Origin: Macrostomum lignano
Taxonomy: Eukaryota
Direction of reading: 5' to 3'
DNA: 13,646 nucleotides
NCBI GenBank assembly: GCA_002269645.1
Contig: NIVC01005264.1
Coordinates: forward strand, 1-13,646
Part shown: one piece after another, positions 1 to 13,646 of the stretch
Layout: every line of letters starts with the position of its first letter
Position numbering within the stretch: position 1 is the first letter of the stretch
Notes under the pieces: model-generated
What the model was told of the DNA's origin: nothing
The model's database searches: none
What the model saw: the letters and a program-made list of their open reading frames with translations, nothing else
Position numbers and translations under genes: made by a program

Positions 1-3000
1 CCCCCCCGCCGTCTCGCGCCTGCCCCGGCGTTTCGCCCCTCCGCTCCCGGCGTGTTCTTCTGCTTCCGTCCCTTGTCTTTTGCCCGCCGTCCGTTTCTTT
101 CGCCCCTCGCCCCGGTTTCCGCTCGCGGCGCCGTTGCCTCTCCTCCCTCCCCCCGCCGTCTCGCGCCTGCCCGGCGTTCGCCCTCCGCTCTCCGCGTGTT
201 CTTCTGCTTCCGTCCCTTGTCTTTTCCCGCCGTCCCGTTTCTTTCGCCCCCTCGCCCCGGTTTCCGCTCGCGGCGCCGTTGCCTTCTCCTCCCTCCCCCC
301 CGCCGTCTCGCGCCTGCCCCGGCGTTCGCCCCTCCGCTCCGGCGTGTTCTTCTGCTTCCGCGCCCTTGTCTTTTGCCCGCCGTCCGTTTCTTTCGCCTCG
401 CCCCGTTGCCGCTCGCGGCGCCGTTGCCTTCTCCTCCTCCCCCCGCCGTCTCGCGCCTGCCCCGGCGTTCGCCCCTCCGCTCCGCGTGTTCTTCTGCTTC
501 CGTGCCCCTTGTCTTTTGCCCGCCGTCCGTTGTTTCGCCCCCTCGCCCCGGTTTCCGCTCGCGGCGCCGTTGCCTTCTCCTCCCTCCCCCGCCGTCTCGC
601 GCCTGCCCGGCGTTCGCCCCCTCCGCCTCCCGGGTGTTCTTCTGCTTCCGCGCCCTTGTCTTTTTGCCCGCCGTCCGTTTTCGCCCCCTCGCCCCGTTTC
701 CGCTCGCGGCGCCGTTGCCTTCTCCTCCCTCCCCCCCGCCGTCTCGCGCCTGCCCCGGTTCGCCCTCCGCTTCCGGCGTGTTCTTCTGCTTCCGCGCCTT
801 GTCTTTTGCCGCCGTCCGTTTCTTTCGCCCCCTCCCCCGGTTTCCGCTCGCGGCGCCGTTGCCTTCTCCTCTCCCCCCCGCCGTCTCGCGCCTGCCCGGC
901 GTTCGCCCTCCGCTCCCGGCGTGTTCTTCTGCTTCCGGCCCTTGTCTTTTGCCCGCCGTCCGTTTCTTTCGCCCCTCGCCCGGTTTCCGCTCGCGCGCCG
1001 TTGCCTTCTCCTCCCTCCCCCGCCGTCTCGCGCCTGCCCCGGCGTTTCGCCCCTCCGCTCCCGGCGTGTTCTTCTGCTTCCGTGCCCTTGTCTTTTGCCC
1101 GCCCGTCCGTTTTGTTTCGCCCCCTCGCCCCGGTTTCCGCTCGCGGCGCCGTTGCCTTCTCCTCCCTCCCCCGCCGTCTCGCGCCTGCCCCGGCGTTCGC
1201 CCTCCGCTCCCGCGTGTTCTTCTGCTTCCGTGCCCTTGTCTTTTGCCCGCGTCCGTTTCTTTCGCCCCCTCGCCCCGGTTTCCGCTCGCGGCGCCGTTGC
1301 CTTCTCCTCCCTCCCCCCCGCCGTCTCGCGCCTGCCCCGGCGTTCGCCCCTCCGCTCCGCGGCGTGTTCTTCTGCTTCCGTCCCTTGTCTTTTGCCCGCC
1401 GTCCGTTTGTTTCGCCCCCTCGCCCGGTTTCCGCTCGCGGCGCCGTTGCTCTCCCTCCCCCCGCCGTCTCGCGCCTGCCCGGCGTTCGCCCCTCCGCTCC
1501 CGGCGTGTTCTTCTGCTTCCGTGCCCTTGTCTTTGCCCGCCGTCCGTTTGTTTCGCCCCCTCGCCCCGGTTTCCGCTCGCGGCGCCGTTGCCTTCTCCTC
1601 CCTCCCCCCGCCGTCTCGCGCCTGCCCCCGGCGTTCGCCCCTCCGCTCCCGGCGTGTTTCTTCTGCTTCCGCGCCCTTGTCTTTTGCCCGCCGTCCGTTT
1701 CTTTCGCCCCCTCGCCCCGGTTTCCGCTCGCGGCGCCGTTGCCTCTCCTCCCTCCCCCCCGCCGTCTCGCGCCTGCCCCGGCGTTCGCCCCTCCGCTCCC
1801 GGCGCGTTCTTCTGCTTCCGTCCCCTTGTCTTTTGCCCGCCGTCCGTTTTTTCGCCCCCTCGCCCCGGTTTCCGCTCGCGGCGCCGTTGCCTTCTCCTCC
1901 CTCCCCCGCCGTCTCGCGCCTGCCCCGGCGTTCGCCCCTCCGCTCCCGGCGTGTTCTTCTGCTTCCGTGCCCTTGTCTTTTGCCCGCCGTCCGTTTCTTT
2001 CGCCCCTCGCCCGGTTTCCGCTCGCGGCGCCGTTGCCTTCTCCTCCCTCCCCCCGCCGTCTCGCGCCTGCCCCGGCGTTCGCCCCTCCGGCTCCGCGTGT
2101 TCTTCTGCTTCCGCGCCTTGTCTTTTGCCCGCCGTCCGTTTGTTTCGCCCCTCGCCCCGGTTTCCGCTCGCGGCGCCGTTGCCTTCTCCTCCCTCCCCCC
2201 CGCCGTCTCGCGCCTGCCCCGGCGTTCGCCCTCCGCTCCCGGCGTGTTCTTCTGCTTCCGGCCCTTGTCTTTTGCCCGCCGTCCGTTTCTTTCGCCCCCT
2301 CGCCCCGGTTTCCGCTCGCGGCGCCGTTGCCTTCTCCTCCCTCCCCCCCGACGTCTCGCGCCTGCCCCGGCGTTCGCCCTCCGCTCCCGGCGTGTTCTTC
2401 TGCTTCCGTGCACTTGTCTTTTGCCCGCCGTCCGTTTTTTTCGCCCCCTCGCCCGGTTTCCGCTCGCGGCGCCGTTGCCTTCTCCTCCTCCCCCCCGCCG
2501 TCTCGCGCCTGCCCCGGCGTTCGCCCCTCCGCTTCCGCGCGTGTTCTTCTGCTTCCGTGCCCTTGTCTTTTGCCCGCCGTCCGTTTTGTTTCGCCCCCTC
2601 GCCCCGGTTTCCGCTCGCGGCGCCGTTGCCTTCTCCTCCCTCCCCCCGCCGTCTCGCGCCTGCCCCGGCGTTCGCCCCTCCGCTCCCGGCGTGTTCTTCT
2701 GCTTCCGTGCCCTTGTCTTTTGCCCGCCGTCCGTTTGTTTCGCCCCTCGCCCCGGTTTCCGCTCGCGGCGCCGTTGCCTTCTCCTCCCTCCCCCGCCGTC
2801 TCGCGCCTGCCCCGGCGTTCGCCCCTCCGCTCCCGGCGTGTTCTTCTGCTTCCGTGCCCTTGTCTTTTGCCCGCCGTCCGTTTTTTCGCCCCCTCGCCCC
2901 GGTTTCCGCTCGCGGCGCCGTTGCCTTCTCCTCCCTCCCCCCCGCCGTCTCGCGCCTGCCCCGGCGTTCGCCCTCCGCTCCCGGCGTGTTCTTCTGCTTC

Positions 3001-6000
3001 CGTGCCCTTGTCTTTTGCCCGCCGTCCGTTTCTTTCGCCCCCTCGCCCCGGTTTCCGCTCGCGGCGCCGTTGCCTTCTCCTCCCTCCCCCCGCCGTCTCG
3101 CGCCTGCCCCGGCGTTCGCCCCTCCGCTCCCGGCGTGTTCTTCTGCTTCCGTCCCTTGTCTTTTGCCCGCCGTCCGTTTCTTTCGCCCCCTCGCCCCGGT
3201 TTCCGCTCGCGGCGCCGTTGCCTTCTCCTCCCTCCCCCCCGCCGTCTCGCGCCTGCCCCGGCGTTCGCCCCTCCGCTCCCGGCGTGTTCTTCTGCTTCCG
3301 TGCCCTTGTCTTTTGCCCGCCGTCCGTTTCTTTCGCCCCTCGCCCCGGTTTCCGCTCGCGGCGCCGTTGCCTTCTCCTCCCTCCCCCCGCCGTCTCGCGC
3401 CTGCCCCGGCGTTCGCCCTCCGCTTCCGGCGCGTTCTTCTGCTTCCGTGCCCTTGTCTTTTGCCCGCCGTCCGTTTGTTTCGCCCCTCGCCCCGGTTTCC
3501 GCTCGCGGCGCCGTTGCCTTCTCCTCCCTCCCCGCCGTCTCGCGCCTGCCCCGGCGTTCGCCCCTCCGCTCCCGGCGTGTTCTTCTGCTTCCGTCCCTTG
3601 TCTTTTGCCCGCCGTCCGTTTGTTCGCCCCTCGCCCCGGTTTCCGCTCGCGGCGCCGTTGCCTTCTCCTCCCTCCCCCCGCCGTCTCGCGCCTGCCCCGG
3701 CGTTCGCCCCTCCGCTCCGCGCGTGTTCTTCTGCTTCCGTGCCCTTGTCTTTTGCCCGCCGTCCGTTTGTTTCGCCCCCTCGCCCCGGTTTCCGCTCGCG
3801 GCGCCGTTGCCTTCTCCTCCCTCCCCCCGCCGTCTCGCGCCTGCCCCGGCGTTCGCCCCTCCGCTCCCGGCGTGTTCTTCTGCTTCCGTGCCCTTGTCTT
3901 TTGCCCGCCGTCCGTTTCTTTCGCCCCCTCGCCCCGGTTTCCGCTCGCGGCGCCGTTGCCTTCTCCTCCCTCCCCCCGCCGTCTCGCGCCTGCCCCGGCG
4001 TTCGCCCCTCCGCTCCCGGCGTGTTCTTCTGCTTCCGTGCCCTTGTCTTTTGCCCGCCGTCCGTTTCTTTCGCCCCCTCGCCCCGGTTTCCGCTCGCGGC
4101 GCCGTTGCCTTCTCCTCCCTCCCCCCCGCCGTCTCGCGCCTGCCCCGGCGTTCGCCCCTCCGCTCCCGGCGTGTTCTTCTGCTTCCGTGCCCTTGTCTTT
4201 TGCCCGCCGTCCGTTTGTTTCGCCCCTCGCCCCGGTTTCCGCTCGCGGCGCCGTTGCCTTCTCCTCCCTCCCCCCCGCCGTCTCGCGCCTGCCCCGGCGT
4301 TCGCCCCTCCGCTCCCGGCGTGTTCTTCTGCTTCCGTGCCCTTGTCTTTTGCCCGCCGTCCGTTTGTTTCGCCCCTCGCCCCGGTTTCCGCTCGCGGCGC
4401 CGTTGCCTTCTCCTCCCTCCCCCCCGCCGTCTCGCGCCTGCCCGGCGTTCGCCCTCCGCTCCCGGCGTGTTCTTCTGCTTCCGTGCCCTTGTCTTTTGCC
4501 CGCCGTCCGTTTTTCGCCCCTCGCCCCGGTTTCCGCTCGCGGCGCCGTTGCCTTCTCCTCCCTCCCCCCGCCGTCTCGCGCCTGCCCCGGCGTTCGCCCC
4601 TCCGCTCCCGGCGTGTTCTTCTGCTTCCGTGCCCTTGTCTTTTGCCCGCCGTCCGTTTTTCGCCCCCTCGCCCCGGTTTCCGCTCGCGGCGCCGTTGCCT
4701 TCTCCTCCCTCCCCCCCGCCGTCTCGCGCCTGCCCCGGCGTTCGCCCTCCGCTCCCGGCGTGTTCTTCTGCTTCCGTGCCCTTGTCTTTTGCCCGCCGTC
4801 CGTTTCTTTCGCCCCCTCGCCCCGGTTTCCGCTCGCGGCGCCGTTGCCTTCTCCTCCCTCCCCCCGCCGTCTCGCGCCTGCCCCGGCGTTCGCCCCTCCG
4901 CTCCCGGCGTGTTCTTCTGCTTCCGTGCCCTTGTCTTTTGCCCGCCGTCCGTTTCTTTCGCCCCCTCGCCCCGGTTTCCGCTCGCGGCGCCGTTGCCTTC
5001 TCCTCCCTCCCCCCCGCCGTCTCGCGCCTGCCCCGGCGTTCGCCCCTCCGCTCCCGGCGTGTTCTTCTGCTTCCGTGCCCTTGTCTTTTGCCCGCCGTCC
5101 GTTTCTTTCGCCCCCTCGCCCCGGTTTCCGCTCGCGGCGCCGTTGCCTTCTCCTCCCTCCCCCCCGCCGTCTCGCGCCTGCCCCGGCGTTCGCCCCTCCG
5201 CTCCCGGCGTGTTCTTCTGCTTCCGTGCCCTTGTCTTTTGCCCGCCGTCCGTTTGTTTCGCCCCCTCGCCCCGGTTTCCGCTCGCGGCGCCGTTGCCTTC
5301 TCCTCCCTCCCCCCGCCGTCTCGCGCCTGCCCCGGCGTTCGCCCTCCGCTCCCGGCGTGTTCTTCTGCTTCCGTGCCCTTGTCTTTTGCCCGCCGTCCGT
5401 TTTTTCGCCCCCTCGCCCCGGTTTCCGCTCGCGGCGCCGTTGCCTTCTCCTCCCTCCCCCCGCCGTCTCGCGCCTGCCCCGGCGTTCGCCCCTCCGCTCC
5501 CGGCGTGTTCTTCTGCTTCCGTGCCCTTGTCTTTTGCCCGCCGTCCGTTTTTCGCCCCTCGCCCCGGTTTCCGCTCGCGGCGCCGTTGCCTTCTCCTCCC
5601 TCCCCCCGCCGTCTCGCGCCTGCCCCGGCGTTCGCCCTCCGCTCCCGGCGTGTTCTTCTGCTTCCGTGCCCTTGTCTTTTGCCCGCCGTCCGTTTCTTTC
5701 GCCCCCTCGCCCCGGTTTCCGCTCGCGGCGCCGTTGCCTTCTCCTCCCTCCCCCCGCCGTCTCGCGCCTGCCCCGGCGTTCGCCCCTCCGCTCCCGGCGT
5801 GTTCTTCTGCTTCCGTGCCCTTGTCTTTTGCCCGCCGTCCGTTTGTTTCGCCCCCTCGCCCCGGTTTCCGCTCGCGGCGCCGTTGCCTTCTCCTCCCTCC
5901 CCCCGCCGTCTCGCGCCTGCCCCGGCGTTCGCCCCTCCGCTCCCGGCGTGTTCTTCTGCTTCCGTGCCCTTGTCTTTTGCCCGCCGTCCGTTTCTTTCGC

Positions 6001-9000
6001 CCCTCGCCCCGGTTTCCGCTCGCGGCGCCGTTGCCTTCTCCTCCCTCCCCCCGCCGTCTCGCGCCTGCCCCGGCGTTCGCCCCTCCGCTCCCGGCGTGTT
6101 CTTCTGCTTCCGTGCCCTTGTCTTTTGCCCGCCGTCCGTTTTTTCGCCCCCTCGCCCCGGTTTCCGCTCGCGGCGCCGTTGCCTTCTCCTCCCTCCCCCC
6201 GCCGTCTCGCGCCTGCCCCGGCGTTCGCCCCTCCGCTCCCGGCGTGTTCTTCTGCTTCCGTGCCCTTGTCTTTTGCCCGCCGTCCGTTTGTTTCGCCCCC
6301 TCGCCCCGGTTTCCGCTCGCGGCGCCGTTGCCTTCTCCTCCCTCCCCCCGCCGTCTCGCGCCTGCCCCGGCGTTCGCCCCTCCGCTCCCGGCGTGTTCTT
6401 CTGCTTCCGTGCCCTTGTCTTTTGCCCGCCGTCCGTTTCTTTCGCCCCCTCGCCCCGGTTTCCGCTCGCGGCGCCGTTGCCTTCTCCTCCCTCCCCCCGC
6501 CGTCTCGCGCCTGCCCCGGCGTTCGCCCCTCCGCTCCCGGCGTGTTCTTCTGCTTCCGTGCCCTTGTCTTTTGCCCGCCGTCCGTTTCTTTCGCCCCCTC
6601 GCCCCGGTTTCCGCTCGCGGCGCCGTTGCCTTCTCCTCCTCCCCCCCGCCGTCTCGCGCCTGCCCCGGCGTTCGCCCCTCCGCTCCCGGCGTGTTCTTCT
6701 GCTTCCGTGCCCTTGTCTTTTGCCCGCCGTCCGTTTCTTTCGCCCCCTCGCCCCGGTTTCCGCTCGCGGCGCCGTTGCCTTCTCCTCCCTCCCCCCCGCC
6801 GTCTCGCGCCTGCCCCGGCGTTCGCCCTCCGCTCCCGGCGTGTTCTTCTGCTTCCGTGCCCTTGTCTTTTGCCCGCCGTCCGTTTTTTCGCCCCTCGCCC
6901 CGGTTTCCGCTCGCGGCGCCGTTGCCTTCTCCTCCCTCCCCCCCGCCGTCTCGCGCCTGCCCCGTTCGCCCTCCGCTCCCGGCGTGTTCTTCTGCTTCCG
7001 TGCCCTTGTCTTTTGCCCGCCGTCCGTTTCTTTCGCCCCCTCGCCCCGGTTTCCGCTCGCGGCGCCGTTGCCTTCTCCTCCCTCCCCCCCGCCGTCTCGC
7101 GCCTGCCCCGGCGTTCGCCCTCCGCTCCCGGCGTGTTCTTCTGCTTCCGTGCCCTTGTCTTTTGCCCGCCGTCCGTTTCTTTCGCCCCCTCGCCCCGGTT
7201 TCCGCTCGCGGCGCCGTTGCCTTCTCCTCCCTCCCCCCCGCCGTCTCGCGCCTGCCCCGGCGTTCGCCCCTCCGCTCCCGGCGTGTTCTTCTGCTTCCGT
7301 GCCCTTGTCTTTTGCCCGCCGTCCGTTTGTTTCGCCCCCTCGCCCCGGTTTCCGCTCGCGGCGCCGTTGCCTTCTCCTCCCTCCCCCCCGTCTCGCGCCT
7401 GCCCCGGCGTTCGCCCCTCCGCTCCCGGCGTGTTCTTCTGCTTCCGTGCCCTTGTCTTTTGCCCGCCGTCCGTTTGTTTCGCCCCCTCGCCCCGGTTTCC
7501 GCTCGCGGCGCCGTTGCCTTCTCCTCCTCCCCCCGCCGTCTCGCGCCTGCCCCGGCGTTCGCCCCTCCGCTCCCGGCGTGTTCTTCTGCTTCCGTGCCCT
7601 TGTCTTTTGCCCGCCGTCCGTTTCTTTCGCCCCCTCGCCCCGGTTTCCGCTCGCGGCGCCGTTGCCTTCTCCTCCCTCCCCCCGCCGTCTCGCGCCTGCC
7701 CCGGCGTTCGCCCTCCGCTCCCGGCGTGTTCTTCTGCTTCCGTGCCCTTGTCTTTTGCCCGCCGTCCGTTTGTTTCGCCCCCTCGCCCCGGTTTCCGCTC
7801 GCGGCGCCGTTGCCTTCTCCTCCCTCCCCCCCGCCGTCTCGCGCCTGCCCCGGCGTTCGCCCCTCCGCTCCCGGCGTGTTCTTCTGCTTCCGTGCCCTTG
7901 TCTTTTGCCCGCCGTCCGTTTCTTTCGCCCCCTCGCCCCGGTTTCCGCTCGCGGCGCCGTTGCCTTCTCCTCCCTCCCCCCCGCCGTCTCGCGCCTGCCC
8001 CGGCGTTCGCCCCTCCGCTCCCGGCGTGTTCTTCTGCTTCCGTGCCCTTGTCTTTTGCCCGCCGTCCGTTTCTTTCGCCCCTCGCCCCGGTTTCCGCTCG
8101 CGGCGCCGTTGCCTTCTCCTCCCTCCCCCCCGCCGTCTCGCGCCTGCCCCGGCGTTCGCCCCTCCGCTCCCGGCGTGTTCTTCTGCTTCCGTGCCCTTGT
8201 CTTTTGCCCGCCGTCCGTTTGTTTCGCCCCCTCGCCCCGGTTTCCGCTCGCGGCGCCGTTGCCTTCTCCTCCCTCCCCCCCGCCGTCTCGCGCCTGCCCC
8301 GGCGTTCGCCCCTCCGCTCCCGGCGTGTTCTTCTGCTTCCGTGCCCTTGTCTTTTGCCCGCCGTCCGTTTCTTTCGCCCCCTCGCCCCGGTTTCCGCTCG
8401 CGGCGCCGTTGCCTTCTCCTCCCTCCCCCGCCGTCTCGCGCCTGCCCCGGCGTTCGCCCCTCCGCTCCCGGCGTGTTCTTCTGCTTCCGTGCCCTTGTCT
8501 TTTGCCCGCCGTCCGTTTGTTTCGCCCCCTCGCCCCGGTTTCCGCTCGCGGCGCCGTTGCCTTCTCCTCCCTCCCCCCGCCGTCTCGCGCCTGCCCCGGC
8601 GTTCGCCCCTCCGCTCCCGGCGTGTTCTTCTGCTTCCGTGCCCTTGTCTTTTGCCCGCCGTCCGTTTGTTTCGCCCCCTCGCCCCGGTTTCCGCTCGCGG
8701 CGCCGTTGCCTTCTCCTCCCTCCCCCCCGCCGTCTCGCGCCTGCCCCGGCGTTCGCCCCTCCGCTCCCGGCGTGTTCTTCTGCTTCCGTGCCCTTGTCTT
8801 TTGCCCGCCGTCCGTTTGTTTCGCCCCTCGCCCCGGTTTCCGCTCGCGGCGCCGTTGCCTTCTCCTCCCTCCCCCCGCCGTCTCGCGCCTGCCCCGGCGT
8901 TCGCCCTCCGCTCCCGGCGTGTTCTTCTGCTTCCGTGCCCTTGTCTTTTGCCCGCCGTCCGTTTTTTCGCCCCCTCGCCCCGGTTTCCGCTCGCGGCGCC

Positions 9001-9655
9001 GTTGCCTTCTCCTCCCTCCCCCCCGCCGTCTCGCGCCTGCCCCGGCGTTCGCCCTCCGCTCCCGGCGTGTTCTTCTGCTTCCGTGCCCTTGTCTTTTGCC
9101 CGCCGTCCGTTTGTTTCGCCCCCTCGCCCCGGTTTCCGCTCGCGGCGCCGTTGCCTTCTCCTCCCTCCCCCGCCGTCTCGCGCCTGCCCCGGCGTTCCCT
9201 CCGCTCCCGGCGTTTCTTCTGCTCCGGCTTGCCGCCGTCTCGCGCCTGCCCCGGCGTTCGCCCCTCCGCTCCCGGCGTGTTCTTCTGCTTCCGTGCCCTT
9301 GTCTTTTGCCCGCCGTCCGTTTGTTTCGCCCCCTCGCCCCGGTTTCCGCTCGCGGCGCCGTTGCCTTCTCCCCCTCCCCCCCGCCGTCTCGCGCCTGCCC
9401 CGGCGTTCGCCCCTCCGCTCCCGGCGTGTTCTTCTGCTTCCGTGCCCTTGTCTTTTGCCCGCCGTCCGTTTGTTTCGCCACCTCGCCCCGGTTTCCGCTC
9501 GCGGCGCCGTTGCCTTCTCCTCCCTCCCCCCCGCCGTCTCGCGCCTGCCCCGGCGTTCGCCCCTCCGCTCCGCGGCGTGTTCTTCTGCTTCCGTGCCTTG
9601 TCTTTTGCCGCCGTCCGTTTGTTTCGCCCCTCGCCCCGGTTTCCGCTCGCGGCGC
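1..9655 (+). other. A>C-converted copy of the same 150-bp array (about 65 copies), probably a sequencing or base-calling artefact
   Basis: Replacing every A in the native monomer with C reproduces this region: ATAACTACACCAAGCAG > CTCCCTCCCCCCCGCCG, GAAAATACGCT > GCCCCTCCGCT, TAGACAAATAGACAC > TCGCCCCCTCGCCCC, TTTAAGCTAGAGG > TTTCCGCTCGCGG. The only A bases I found are at 2351, 2412 and 9480. The conversion is seen directly; calling it an artefact is inference. Confidence 0.9.
9151..9360. repeat. Truncated or fused monomer pair (210 bp instead of 300 bp)
   Basis: Consecutive monomer starts (TTGCCTTCTC) are at 9151 and 9361. The junction at about 9221-9240 (GCTCCGGCTTGCCGCCGTCT) jumps from the middle of one monomer to position ~24-30 of the next. 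Confidence 0.85.
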
Positions 9656-12600
9656 AGTTGCCTTCTAATAACTACACCAAGCAGTCTCGCGCATGCACAG
9701 GCGTTCGAAAAACGCTCACGGCGCGTGTTATTCTGCTTCCGTGCACTTGTATTTTGCACGCAGTCAGTTTCTTTAAGACAAATAGACCGGTTTAAGCTAG
9801 AGGCGCAGTTGCCTTCTAATAACTACACCAAGCAGTCTCGCGCATGCACAGGCGTTCGAAAATACGCTCACGGCGGCGTGTTATTCTGCTTCCGTGCACT
9901 TGTATTTTGCACGCAGTCAGTTTCTTTCAACAAATAGACACGGTTTAAGCTAGAGGCGCAGTTGCCTTCTAATAACTACACCAAGCAGTCTCGCGCATGC
10001 ACAGCGCGTTCGAAAATACGCTCACGGCGTGTTATTCTGCTTCCGTGCACTTGTTATTTTGCACGCAGTCAGTTTCTTTAGACAAATAGACACGGTTTAA
10101 GCTAGAGGCGCAGTTGCCTCTAATAACTACACCAAGCAGTCTCGCGGCATGCACAGGCGTTCGAAAATACGCTCACGGCGTGTTATTCTGCTTCCGTGCA
10201 CTTGTATTTTGCACGCAGTCAGTTTGTTTAGACAAATAGACACGGTTTAAGCTAGAGGCGCAGTTGCCTTCTAATAACTACACCAAGCAGTCTCGCGCAT
10301 GCACAGGCGTTCGAAATACGCTCACGGCGTGTTATTCTGCTTCCGTGCACTTGTATTTTGCACGCAGTCAGTTTCTTTAGACAAATAGACACGGTTTAAG
10401 CTAGAGGCGCAGTTGCCTTCTAATAACTACACCAAGAGTCTCGCGCATGCACAGGCGTTCGAAAATACGCTCACGGCGTGTTATTCTGCTTCCGTGCACT
10501 TGTATTTTGCACGCAGTCAGTTTTTTAGACAAATAGACACGGTTTAAGCTAGAGGCGCAGTTGCCTTCTAATAACTACACCAAGCAGTCTCGCGCATGCA
10601 CAGGCGTTCGAAAATACGCTCACGGCGTGTTATTCTGCTTCCGTGCACTTGTATTTTGCACGCAGTCAGTTTGTTTAGACAAATAGACACGGTTTAAGCT
10701 AGAGGCGCAGTTGCCTTCTAATAACTACACCAAGCAGTCTCGCGCATGCACAGGCGTTCGAAAATACGCTCACGGCGTGTTATTCTGCTTCCGTGCACTT
10801 GTATTTTGCACGCAGTCAGTTTGTTTAGACAAATAGACACGGTTTAAGCTAGAGGCGCAGTTGCCTTCTAATAACTACACCAAGCAGTCTCGCGCATGCA
10901 CAGGCGTTCGAAAATACGCTCACGGCGTGTTATTCTGCTTCCGTGCACTTGTATTTTGCACGCAGTCAGTTTGTTTAGACAAATAGACACGGTTTAAGCT
11001 AGAGGCGCAGTTGCCTTCTAATAACTACACCAAGCAGTCTCGCGCATGCACAGGCGTTCGAAAATACGCTCACGGCGTGTTATTCTGCTTCCGTGCACTT
11101 GTATTTTGCACGCAGTCAGTTTGTTTAGACAAATAGACACGGTTTAAGCTAGAGGCGCAGTTGCCTTCTAATAACTACACCAAGCAGTCTCGCGCATGCA
11201 CAGGCGTTCGAAAATACGCTCACGGCGTGTTATTCTGCTTCCGTGCACTTGTATTTTGCACGCAGTCAGTTTGTTTAGACAAATAGACACGGTTTAAGCT
11301 AGAGGCGCAGTTGCCTTCTAATAACTACACCAAGCAGTCTCGCGCATGCACAGGCGTTCGAAAATACGCTCACGGCGTGTTATTCTGCTTCCGTGCACTT
11401 GTATTTTGCACGCAGTCAGTTTGTTTAGACAAATAGACACGGTTTAAGCTAGAGGCGCAGTTGCCTTCTAATAACTACACCAAGCAGTCTCGCGCATGCA
11501 CAGGCGTTCGAAAATACGCTCACGGCGTGTTATTCTGCTTCCGTGCACTTGTATTTTGCACGCAGTCAGTTTGTTTAGACAAATAGACACGGTTTAAGCT
11601 AGAGGCGCAGTTGCCTTCTAATAACTACACCAAGCAGTCTCGCGCATGCACAGGCGTTCGAAAATACGCTCACGGCGTGTTATTCTGCTTCCGTGCACTT
11701 GTATTTTGCACGCAGTCAGTTTGTTTAGACAAATAGACACGGTTTAAGCTAGAGGCGCAGTTGCCTTCTAATAACTACACCAAGCAGTCTCGCGCATGCA
11801 CAGGCGTTCGAAAATACGCTCACGGCGTGTTATTCTGCTTCCGTGCACTTGTATTTTGCACGCAGTCAGTTTGTTTAGACAAATAGACACGGTTTAAGCT
11901 AGAGGCGCAGTTGCCTTCTAATAACTACACCAAGCAGTCTCGCGCATGCACAGGCGTTCGAAAATACGCTCACGGCGTGTTATTCTGCTTCCGTGCACTT
12001 GTATTTTGCACGCAGTCAGTTTGTTTAGACAAATAGACACGGTTTAAGCTAGAGGCGCAGTTGCCTTCTAATAACTACACCAAGCAGTCTCGCGCATGCA
12101 CAGGCGTTCGAAAATACGCTCACGGCGTGTTATTCTGCTTCCGTGCACTTGTATTTTGCACGCAGTCAGTTTGTTTAGACAAATAGACACGGTTTAAGCT
12201 AGAGGCGCAGTTGCCTTCTAATAACTACACCAAGCAGTCTCGCGCATGCACAGGCGTTCGAAAATACGCTCACGGCGTGTTATTCTGCTTCCGTGCACTT
12301 GTATTTTGCACGCAGTCAGTTTGTTTAGACAAATAGACACGGTTTAAGCTAGAGGCGCAGTTGCCTTCTAATAACTACACCAAGCAGTCTCGCGCATGCA
12401 CAGGCGTTCGAAAATACGCTCACGGCGTGTTATTCTGCTTCCGTGCACTTGTATTTTGCACGCAGTCAGTTTGTTTAGACAAATAGACACGGTTTAAGCT
12501 AGAGGCGCAGTTGCCTTCTAATAACTACACCAAGCAGTCTCGCGCATGCACAGGCGTTCGAAAATACGCTCACGGCGTGTTATTCTGCTTCCGTGCACTT

Positions 12601-13646
12601 GTATTTTGCACGCAGTCAGTTTGTTTAGACAAATAGACACGGTTTAAGCTAGAGGCGCAGTTGCCTTCTAATAACTACACCAAGCAGTCTCGCGCATGCA
12701 CAGGCGTTCGAAAATACGCTCACGGCGTGTTATTCTGCTTCCGTGCACTTGTATTTTGCACGCAGTCAGTTTTTTAGACAAATAGACACGGTTTAAGCTA
12801 GAGGCGCAGTTGCCTTCTAATAACTACACCAAGCAGTCTCGCGCATGCACAGGCGTTCGAAAATACGCTCACGGCGTGTTATTCTGCTTCCGTGCACTTG
12901 TATTTTGCACGCAGTCAGTTTGTTTAGACAAATAGACACGGTTTAAGCTAGAGGCGCAGTTGCCTTCTAATAACTACACCAAGCAGTCTCGCGCATGCAC
13001 AGGCGTTCGAAAATACGCTCACGGCGTGTTATTCTGCTTCCGTGCACTTGTATTTTGCACGCAGTCAGTTTGTTTAGACAAATAGACACGGTTTAAGCTA
13101 GAGGCGCAGTTGCCTTCTAATAACTACACCAAGCAGTCTCGCGCATGCACAGGCGTTCGAAAATACGCTCACGGCGTGTTATTCTGCTTCCGTGCACTTG
13201 TATTTTGCACGCAGTCAGTTTGTTTAGACAAATAGACACGGTTTAAGCTAGAGGCGCAGTTGCCTTCTAATAACTACACCAAGCAGTCTCGCGCATGCAC
13301 AGGCGTTCGAAAATACGCTCACGGCGTGTTATTCTGCTTCCGTGCACTTGTATTTTGCACGCAGTCAGTTTGTTTAGACAAATAGACACGGTTTAAGCTA
13401 GAGGCGCAGTTGCCTTCTAATAACTACACCAAGCAGTCTCGCGCATGCACAGGCGTTCGAAAATACGCTCAGCGGCGTGTTATTCTGCTTCCGTGCACTT
13501 GTATTTTGCACGCAGTCAGTTTGTTTAGACAAATAGACACGGTTTAAGCTAGAGGCGCAGTTGCCTTCTAATAACTACACCAAGCAGTCTCGCGCATGCA
13601 CAGGCGTTCGAAAATACGCTCACGGCGTGTTATTCTGCTTCGTGCA
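9656..13646. repeat. Native (A-containing) portion of the 150-bp array, about 26.5 copies, non-coding
   Basis: The monomer has balanced composition (37A/37C/34G/42T). Fourteen consecutive copies at 10561-12660 look identical by eye. Hand translation of the monomer gives a stop in all three + frames and all three - frames. Confidence 0.96.

What the first reader, a model, noticed from the sequence alone, without database searches (positions are those of the whole stretch)
1..9655. Complete, strand-specific A>C rewriting of about 65 repeat copies next to unconverted copies
Seen in sequence: all 37 A positions of the monomer read C in about 65 consecutive copies (roughly 2,400 sites, with very few exceptions), while T and G are intact. 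There is no reciprocal T>G, so the change is confined to one strand. GC rises from 47% to 72%. Established knowledge: adenosine deaminases give A>G, DGR retrohoming gives A>N at a subset of adenines, and 8-oxo-dGTP misincorporation (MutT deficiency) gives rare A:T>C:G changes on both strands. None of these gives 100% strand-specific A>C. Inference: a single-molecule detector or base-caller merged the A and C signal classes. As I recall, PacBio Sequel-type chemistries separate A from C mainly by pulse amplitude, which should be verified. If the change were genuine it would be an unknown mutational or editing process.
Basis: partly seen in the sequence, partly recalled or inferred. Interest (0 to 1): 0.75.

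Follow-up and report, generated by a model that had tools for sequence, protein, structure and literature searches.

The report
A-to-C miscalled block in satellite
In 9.7 kb of a 150-base tandem repeat every A is written as C on one strand, and the error pattern around it points to a long-read sequencing or base-calling fault, not to biological editing, so this is a data-quality problem.

Summary
Positions 1-9655 hold 3 A in 9,655 bases. At native-A sites, 2,320 of 2,323 called bases read C, while T (99.7%), G and C are kept. The switch lies between 9650 and 9656, in register, inside one monomer.

The block is not a plain letter swap. Deletions pile up in the newly made C runs: the 7-run is shortened in 24/44 copies, TTTT in 0/46. 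Other errors fall 35-fold from the left end (2.9%) to just before the switch (0.08%). A burst of insertions follows the switch (1.3%), then come 20 monomers, 18 of them error-free. That is the profile of a long-read consensus with uneven support, in which A was reproducibly called C on one strand.

I know of no enzyme or chemistry that gives complete A>C. Neither version of the repeat occurs in any collection I could search, so source, platform and read support remain unknown.

Its single-pass A/C-merging mechanism is only partly supported, because accuracy next to the switch (about Q31) is too high for one raw pass. Interest is low. I put a genuine rewriting or modified-base tract at about 4%.

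The parts
1..9655 (+). Converted block: about 65 copies of the 150-bp monomer with every A read as C (T read as G on the - strand). It runs to the left edge of the window, so it may be longer.
   Evidence: 3 A in 9,655 nt; 2,320/2,323 called native-A sites are C; G and T fractions unchanged
9650..9656 (+). Switch point. The last converted A site is 9650 and the first retained A is 9656. It lies inside monomer 9536-9683, with the repeat register kept.
9656..13646 (+). Native array, about 27 copies with 37 A per monomer. Consensus: GTCTCGCGCATGCACAGGCGTTCGAAAATACGCTCACGGCGTGTTATTCTGCTTCCGTGCACTTGTATTTTGCACGCAGTCAGTTTGTTTAGACAAATAGACACGGTTTAAGCTAGAGGCGCAGTTGCCTTCTAATAACTACACCAAGCA
1..2650 (+). 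Zone A: the converted copies with the most errors. Other errors are 2.9% falling to 1.6%, including insertions and T>C. C-run deletions are 2.5% falling to 1.2%.
2651..9535 (+). Zone B: converted copies whose only frequent errors are shortened C runs. Other errors fall 0.42% > 0.16% > 0.08% towards the switch, with no insertions.
9175..9236 (+). Truncated 62-nt unit (88-nt internal deletion), about 450 nt before the switch.
9536..10586 (+). Zone C: an error burst around and after the switch. There are 10 insertions in 7 monomers, mostly extra G/C in GGCG motifs, and 1.33% other errors.
10587..13435 (+). Zone D: 19 consecutive 150-bp monomers. Eighteen are identical to the consensus and one lacks G87.
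2351..2351 (+). Residual A at a native-C site (GCAG read as GACG).
2412..2412 (+). Residual unconverted A at a native-A site. It recreates an ApaLI site at 2408.
9480..9480 (+). Residual unconverted A at a native-A site, 175 nt before the switch.
52..9937 (+). Three overlapping spurious ORFs (52-9795, 80-9937, 279-9668; 3,129-3,285 aa). They exist only because an A-free strand has no stop codons.

Best explanation
The organism's DNA is most likely the native 150-bp satellite throughout. The left 9.7 kb is a technical product of single-molecule long-read sequencing. On reads of one strand orientation, the signal class for A was called as C (equivalently, T as G if the - strand was the one read). 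These calls went into a contig or consensus that normal reads never corrected, because the converted version is 25% diverged from them.

Shown here:
- The conversion is complete, one-stranded and abrupt, and it keeps the repeat register.
- It happened upstream of the step that makes homopolymer errors.
- Accuracy varies along the block like the support of a consensus, with a burst of errors at the switch.

Inferred:
- The consensus-grade accuracy next to the switch means several passes or reads carried the same miscall.
- Rare faulty reads survive assembly only in a very abundant, homogeneous satellite. There they can overlap each other and line up on the switch, the only landmark. That would give support falling away from the switch.
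- An A/C channel or amplitude confusion on a PacBio-type detector is the most natural pairing of bases. The platform cannot be read from the sequence.
For: (1) Completeness and one-strandedness. 2,320/2,323 called A sites read C; T is kept at 2716/2724; T>G occurs once.

(2) The switch falls within 5 nt (9650/9656), in register.

(3) It is not a letter swap in a file. In 2651-9535 the new C runs are shortened: ACACCAA-derived 7-run 24/44, ACAAA 5-run 11/44, AAAA 4-run 12/46. The TTTT run is 0/46, and the same runs in native copies converted in silico are 0-1/26. Overall deletions are 1.58% per base in converted copies against 0.18% in native ones.

(4) Errors form a gradient typical of sequencing support, not of biology. 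Errors outside C runs and position 87 run 2.86%, 1.60%, 0.42%, 0.16%, 0.08% from the left edge to the switch, then 1.33% just after it, then 0.03%.

(5) Signs of instability cluster near the switch: an 88-nt deletion at -450 nt, a retained A at -175 nt, and 10 insertions within 930 nt after it.

(6) The G87/C87/deletion polymorphism is shared by converted copies and by the native copies next to the switch. So the change acted on an already diversified array molecule, not on one monomer that was later amplified.

(7) A precedent exists for strand-specific, abrupt, multi-read repeat miscalls in long reads: the nanopore telomere errors of Tan et al. 2022, PMC9414165. Per-strand PacBio consensus exists (pbccs --by-strand).

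(8) No trace of the converted version in public data. A 1,200-aa piece of its ORF has 0 hits among 1.84 billion representative proteins and 0 in the word-indexed search. A DNA pattern allowing A or C at A sites has 0 hits in three contig collections.

(9) From established knowledge, no deaminase, DGR, oxidative-damage or chemical-conversion process gives complete A>C.
Against: - No reads, quality values or platform information are available, so the artefact is inferred from the sequence only.
- Accuracy of 99.92% outside C runs next to the switch means the miscall was reproducible across observations. That is what a real sequence would also give.
- A standard two-strand HiFi consensus should not produce a clean one-strand conversion.
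- A>C is a transversion. In the nanopore repeat miscalls, the two error repeats whose current profiles closely match the true repeat (r 0.98-0.99) differ from it only by transitions. The third (CTTCTT, r 0.64) also has A>T changes. A nanopore origin is therefore not natural either.
- The PacBio A/C pairing could not be verified here.
- The absence of the converted version from public collections carries little weight, because the native satellite is absent too.
Confidence: 0.8

Rival explanations
1. A non-canonical base on one strand. In a contiguous tract of one strand, thymine (- strand) or adenine (+ strand) is replaced by a modified base or an analogue. Possible sources are a replication or nick-translation label, or a natural hypermodified base. 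A platform that reads the native strand directly (nanopore) then calls it as G (or C).
For: This gives one-strandedness, a sharp start and a tract running to the end of the molecule without further assumptions. Native-strand reading is single-stranded by nature. The residual error types in the block are pyrimidine transitions (T>C 7, C>T 4) and deletions in pyrimidine tracts, which look nanopore-like (my own knowledge of error profiles).
Against: - No known analogue is reported to be called as one fixed wrong base in every context. dU and BrdU give context-dependent current shifts and only scattered miscalls (PMC12215381).
- 99.9% conversion over 37 different sequence contexts with otherwise Q31 accuracy is hard to get from a disturbed pore signal.
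- Labelled DNA rarely ends up in an assembled record.
- Natural modified bases that I know of (base J, 5hmU, 6mA) are partial and on both strands (own knowledge).
Confidence: 0.07
2. Data-handling corruption. A program replaced A by C in part of a stored read or contig (coding table, masking or buffer fault) after base calling.
For: The change is a perfect letter mapping with a sharp boundary and touches no other base. G and T fractions are identical to three digits on both sides.
Against: - A later letter swap cannot make deletions pile up in runs that are homopolymers only after the swap. ACACCAA is shortened in 24/44 copies in the block but 0/26 in native copies.
- It does not explain the 2 retained A, the error gradient or the error burst at the switch.
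- Simple bit operations on 2-bit codes that turn A into C would also change G or T (reasoning only).
- It stays possible only if the corrupted sequence was later re-polished.
Confidence: 0.05
3. Genuine genomic sequence. The locus really holds an A-less (C-rich/G-rich) version of the satellite next to the normal one. It would have been made by an unknown strand-directed rewriting process, or by one rewritten monomer that was then amplified.
For: Consensus-grade accuracy next to the switch (0.08% other errors) is what real DNA covered by several reads would show. The repeat register is continuous across the switch. In a tandem array only one monomer need change before amplification.
Against: - No known mutational, editing or repair process gives 37/37 A>C with 0/42 T>G (established knowledge of deaminases, DGRs, 8-oxo-dGTP mutagenesis and RIP).
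- The irregular G87/C87/deletion polymorphism is shared with the neighbouring native copies. That argues against amplification from one rewritten monomer.
- A real long array would be covered evenly by internal reads. It should not show a 35-fold error gradient towards the contig end or an error burst exactly at the boundary.
- 4-C runs behave differently by ancestry: AAAA-derived 12/46 shortened against CACA/ACAC-derived 1/92 (Fisher p = 0.0004 on the whole block). On truly identical C runs only flanking context could explain that.
- No other instance in public protein or contig collections.
Confidence: 0.03

Closest known systems
Strand-specific repeat-calling errors of nanopore base callers at telomeres (Tan, Slevin, Meyerson, Li 2022, Genome Biol 23:180, PMC9414165)
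   Same: A tandem repeat is rewritten into another repeat on reads of one strand only. The wrong and right versions sit side by side in the same read. The error is seen in many reads and is absent from an orthogonal platform.
   Different: There the unit is 6 nt, and two of the three error repeats have nearly the same current profile as the true one and differ from it by transitions (G>A, A>G). Here the unit is a complex 150-nt monomer, one base is replaced in 37 different contexts, and the change is a transversion. Current-profile similarity could not be computed here.
Same-channel base confusion in fluorescence single-molecule sequencing
   Same: It would change exactly one base into one other and leave the other two untouched. 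It is single-stranded in any one pass. It would make mixed A/C runs behave as homopolymers, because adjacent pulses with one label merge. That matches the shortened C runs.
   Different: The pairing of A with C by channel or amplitude rests on recollection and was not verifiable here. A raw pass has far more errors than the block shows. A two-strand circular consensus would also show T>G conflicts, and there is only 1 T>G.
One-strand conversion tracts of single-molecule footprinting (for example non-denaturing bisulfite R-loop footprinting read on long reads; my own knowledge, not checked here)
   Same: The shape is the same: kilobase-long, contiguous, near-complete conversion of one base on one strand with sharp ends.
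   Different: Those chemistries give C>T (or A>G), never A>C. They are deliberate treatments, and the products are not deposited as genome sequence.
Diversity-generating retroelement mutagenic retrohoming
   Same: Adenine-specific and templated.
   Different: DGRs give A to any base at a subset of adenines, in one roughly 100-150-nt variable region of a coding gene, next to a reverse transcriptase and a template repeat. Here all A become C in about 65 copies, there is no gene, and no RT can be encoded in a window that is repeat throughout.
A:T>C:G mutagenesis by 8-oxo-dGTP (MutT deficiency)
   Same: The same base change.
   Different: Those changes are rare, scattered and fall on both strands. 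They cannot give 99.9% of sites on one strand (established knowledge).

Membership tests
Single-molecule sequencing / base-calling artefact | The change affects one base class on one strand only | tested here: met
   A>C 2,320/2,323; T>G 1/2,724
Single-molecule sequencing / base-calling artefact | Abrupt onset along the molecule, without disturbing the template register | tested here: met
   Switch between 9650 and 9656 inside one monomer
Single-molecule sequencing / base-calling artefact | Accompanied by changes in the instrument-type error profile | tested here: met
   C-run deletions, a 35-fold error gradient and an insertion burst at the switch
Single-molecule sequencing / base-calling artefact | Absent from reads of the opposite orientation and from an orthogonal platform | not testable with these tools
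   No reads are available. The source record was not found.
Nanopore repeat-calling error (Tan et al. 2022) | Strand-specific, and co-occurring with the correct repeat in one sequence | tested here: met
   definition
Nanopore repeat-calling error (Tan et al. 2022) | True and error repeats have near-identical current profiles | not testable with these tools
   No pore k-mer model is on hand. The two well-matched pairs differ by transitions, whereas A>C is a transversion.
Nanopore repeat-calling error (Tan et al. 2022) | Short unit, on the scale of the pore's k-mer | tested here: not met
   The unit is 150 nt and complex
   0.08-2.9% other errors in the block. It would need several passes or reads with the same miscall.
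   Four literature look-ups found no statement either way
Diversity-generating retroelement | A to any base at a subset of sites; RT gene and template/variable repeat pair | tested here: not met
   Only A>C, at all sites, and the window is satellite throughout
Deaminase or RIP-type hypermutation | Transitions (A>G or C>T) | tested here: not met
   The change is a transversion
Post-hoc letter replacement in a file | The error profile is otherwise identical to the unconverted part | tested here: not met
   Deletions are 9-fold higher and sit in runs that exist only after conversion

The most novel reading that the evidence does not exclude
The block is physically real on one strand. Either the genome carries an A-less copy of its own satellite, made by an unknown strand-directed, complete A>C (T>G) rewriting process. 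Or a kilobase-long tract of one strand carries a modified base at every A (or every T) that the sequencer reads as C (or G).
Probability: 0.04. Interest if true: 0.95.

Novelty: not a real feature. Interest (0 to 1): 0.12.

Why it matters
As biology it most likely does not matter. As data quality it does, in three ways.

(1) A base-free strand has no stop codons. Here it yields three overlapping 3,100-3,300-aa ORFs that a gene caller could deposit as giant proline/arginine-rich 'proteins'.

(2) Such blocks raise apparent GC (72% against 47%) and create a false satellite family.

(3) The case suggests a cheap filter for assemblies and read sets. Flag any stretch of 1 kb or more that lacks one base and that, after the same two letters are merged in its neighbour, matches that neighbour.

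It also suggests why such artefacts would surface in satellites. Only there can rare faulty reads overlap one another and survive assembly. This last point is inference.

If the block were genuine, it would be an unknown mutational or base-modification process and of the highest interest.

Tried and rejected
Finding the source record or organism. None of these succeeded:
- Exact look-up of the three giant ORFs, from their start codons and from the window edge, and of the 41- and 40-aa native ORFs: none is on record.
- Word-indexed protein search with 1,583 aa of the converted ORF: 8,000 low-complexity candidates, none significant.
- The same search with a five-frame concatenate of the native monomer: no hit.
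- Full HMMER scan of 1.84 billion representatives: 0 hits.
- DNA pattern with M (A or C) at the A sites in genome, viral and metagenome contigs: 0 hits.
- Native 26-mer in genome contigs: 0 hits.
- Native 20-mer in metagenome contigs: 7 hits, shown by BLAST to be 20-22-nt chance matches.
- blastn against plasmids and phages: none. Rfam: none. Monomer k-mers in the paper library: none.

Literature. I could not confirm the Sequel A/C amplitude scheme. I found no report of an A>C or T>G long-read artefact. I checked whether thymidine analogues are called as one fixed base: they are not.

Ideas considered and dropped:
- Loss of one channel in two-colour Illumina chemistry would also give T>G, and the reads are too short.
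- dNTP depletion during in-vitro synthesis would give transitions.
- Bit-level corruption would touch G or T.
- DGR, RIP, ADAR/APOBEC and MutT: wrong spectrum or wrong completeness.
- Using the different shortening of AAAA-derived and CACA/ACAC-derived C runs as proof that the template still holds A. This is suggestive but confounded, because the deletion-prone runs are also the ones flanked by T.
Full report
**What is there.** The whole 13,646-nt window is one tandem array of a 149-150-nt unit (TRF). It has two parts.
- From 9656 to the right end the composition is ordinary: A 24.6, C 24.9, G 22.6, T 27.9%.
- From 1 to 9655 there are 3 A in 9,655 bases. C is 49.3%, which equals A plus C of the other part. 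G (22.5%) and T (28.2%) are unchanged.

I cut the array at a motif without A (GTCTCGCG, 93 hits) and aligned the 92 units. The two consensus monomers differ only by A>C at the native A positions (MAFFT lines up 36 of the 37). The remaining differences in that alignment are a misaligned monomer end and the polymorphic position 87.

Counted site by site, native-A columns in the left part read C 2,320 times, A twice and T once. T is kept in 2,716 of 2,724 called bases, and T>G occurs once. The three remaining A are at 2412 and 9480 (native-A sites) and 2351 (a native-C site). The last converted A site is 9650 and the first retained A is 9656. The repeat register is continuous, and nothing is converted after that point. 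One small correction: the retained A at 2412 recreates an ApaLI site at 2408.

**The block is not a simple letter swap.** Relative to consensus, with A and C treated as equal, converted copies have 1.58% deletions per base against 0.18% in native copies. The deletions sit in C runs that exist only after conversion. In 2651-9535:

| Run (native origin) | Copies shortened |
|---|---|
| 7-run from ACACCAA | 24 of 44 |
| 5-run from ACAAA | 11 of 44 |
| 4-run from AAAA | 12 of 46 |
| TTTT run | 0 of 46 |

The same runs in native copies converted in silico are shortened in 0-1 of 26. So the step that produces homopolymer errors already 'saw' C at the A sites. The conversion happened at the level of the molecule or the signal or base call, not in a finished file.

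A possible further clue is that 4-C runs differ by ancestry. AAAA-derived runs are shortened in 12/46 copies, CACA- and ACAC-derived runs in 1/92 (Fisher p = 0.0004 on the whole block). Truly identical C runs should not differ this way. However, the deletion-prone runs are also the ones flanked by T, so I treat this as suggestive only.

**Errors along the window.** I left aside C-run deletions and the polymorphic position 87.

| Region | Other errors |
|---|---|
| 1-1024 | 2.86% |
| 1025-2650 | 1.60% |
| 2651-4572 | 0.42% |
| 4573-7093 | 0.16% |
| 7094-9535 | 0.08% |
| 9536-10586 (around and after the switch) | 1.33% |
| 10587-13586 | 0.03% |

The region after the switch has 10 insertions in 7 monomers, mostly extra G or C in GGCG motifs. 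In 10587-13435 there are 19 monomers of which 18 equal the consensus exactly. C-run deletions decline in parallel, from 2.5% to 0.7%. Near the switch there is also an 88-nt deletion (unit 9175-9236) and one retained A (9480).

This is what a long-read consensus with uneven support looks like, with a disturbed zone at the switch. A biological boundary has no reason to be flanked by indel errors in the neighbouring native copies. A real long array should be covered evenly by internal reads.

**What the accuracy implies.** Just left of the switch the block is 99.92% accurate outside C runs, yet fully converted. No raw single pass that I know of reaches this (own knowledge: raw PacBio passes have about 10-15% error, and nanopore simplex reads about 1% or more). 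The miscall was therefore reproduced in all the passes or reads behind the consensus.

A standard two-strand circular consensus does not fit either. An A/C merge would give A>C in passes of one sense and T>G (in + coordinates) in the other, and there is a single T>G.

Three routes remain:
- a per-strand consensus (pbccs has a --by-strand mode);
- a majority of affected same-sense passes in a low-pass molecule;
- several same-orientation faulty reads polished together.

The last route gives a reason why the artefact sits in a satellite. In unique DNA a rare faulty read finds no partner and is dropped. In an abundant homogeneous satellite, faulty reads overlap each other and can be lined up only on their switch, so support falls with distance from it. 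That matches the gradient, but it is inference, not shown.

**Which platform.** I cannot tell.
- *For a fluorescence detector:* exactly one base becomes exactly one other. Mixed A/C runs behave as homopolymers, as expected if adjacent pulses with one label merge. From recollection, A and C are neighbours in the Sequel detection scheme. Four literature look-ups failed to confirm or refute that.
- *For nanopore:* reads are single-stranded by nature. The residual errors are deletions in pyrimidine tracts and pyrimidine transitions (T>C 7, C>T 4). There is a documented precedent of strand-specific, abrupt, multi-read repeat miscalls at telomeres (Tan et al. 2022).
- *Against nanopore:* in that precedent, the two error repeats whose current profiles closely match the true repeat (r 0.98-0.99) differ from it only by transitions, and the units are 6 nt. 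The third, CTTCTT, also has A>T changes and correlates only at r 0.64. Here a transversion hits 37 different contexts of a complex 150-nt unit.

**Biological readings.** From established knowledge:
- Adenosine deaminases give A>G.
- DGRs give A to any base at some adenines of one variable region next to a reverse transcriptase.
- RIP and APOBEC give C>T.
- 8-oxo-dGTP gives rare A:T>C:G on both strands.
- Base-conversion chemistries give C>T or A>G.

None gives 99.9% A>C on one strand.

In a tandem array one rewritten monomer could in principle be amplified. But position 87 is irregularly G, C or deleted both in the converted copies and in the native copies next to the switch, and is G (one copy lacks it) further right. 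So the conversion acted on an already diversified stretch of array.

A modified base or analogue on one strand, read directly by a pore, would explain the strandedness and the sharp start. But analogues such as dU and BrdU give context-dependent shifts and scattered miscalls, not one fixed wrong base.

**Searches elsewhere.** Neither version of the repeat was found anywhere I could look.
- Exact look-ups of the giant ORFs and the short native ORFs failed.
- Protein searches with the converted ORF found nothing (0 of 1.84 billion representatives), nor did the search with the native frames.
- DNA patterns had no hits in genome, viral and metagenome contigs. Seven metagenome hits to a native 20-mer are 20-22-nt chance matches.
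- Plasmids, phages, Rfam and the paper library gave nothing.

The organism, the record and the platform therefore remain unknown. The absence of the converted version elsewhere carries little weight, because the native satellite is absent too.

**Verdict.** The best explanation is a technical artefact of long-read sequencing or base calling (confidence 0.8). The rivals are:
- a one-strand modified-base tract miscalled by a direct-reading platform (0.07);
- file-level corruption followed by re-polishing (0.05);
- genuine sequence (0.03).

The feature is most likely not real, and interest is low. The practical value is as a quality-control case.

Noticed in passing
window 52-9937 (+): The A-free strand has no stop codon, so all three + frames are open for more than 9 kb. 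The resulting ORFs are 3,247, 3,285 and 3,129 aa and rich in Pro, Arg, Ser and Ala. A gene caller would report a giant protein. None is in the public protein sets.
   Followed up: yes
window 10587-13435: Nineteen consecutive monomers, 18 of them identical to the consensus to the base and one lacking G87. Either this is a very recently homogenised sub-array, or it is a consensus collapsed over many reads. It contrasts with the error-rich native copies at 9656-10586.
   Followed up: partly
monomer position 87 (GTTT[G]TTT), e.g. window 89, 382, 9763, 10516, 12765: This one site is G, C or deleted in irregular order through 1-10586. Across all 64 full converted copies it is about 29 C, 10 deletions and 1 T, with the rest G. 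After 10586 it is G, apart from one deletion at 12765. It looks like a real polymorphism shared across the switch, but a site-specific error cannot be excluded.
   Followed up: partly
window 9175-9236: One unit is only 62 nt long: an 88-nt internal deletion with untidy edges, about 450 nt before the switch. It could be a real variant or a skip in the read.
   Followed up: no
window 9536-10300: The insertions just after the switch are small duplications in GC motifs (CACGGCG read as CACGGCGCG or CACGGCGGCG, and CGCGCATG read as CGCGGCATG). This error type is absent from 2651-9535.
   Followed up: partly
window 305-2204: T>C substitutions recur at monomer position 58 (CCGTGC read as CCGCGC, 5 copies) and position 42 (2 copies; one of them lies further right, in the unit at 3392-3536). 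The position-58 cases occur only in the most error-rich left end of the block.
   Followed up: no
window 1-9655 (-): The complementary strand is 49% G, with G runs of 3-7 in every monomer. If the block were real DNA it would be strongly prone to G-quadruplex formation (i-motif on the + strand). I did not fold it.
   Followed up: no
L001-L007 (metagenome contigs): The native 20-mer GTTCGAAAATACGCTCACGG occurs once in each of seven unrelated metagenome contigs, and the matches do not extend beyond 20-22 nt. It may be a conserved gene motif. It is unrelated to the satellite.
   Followed up: partly
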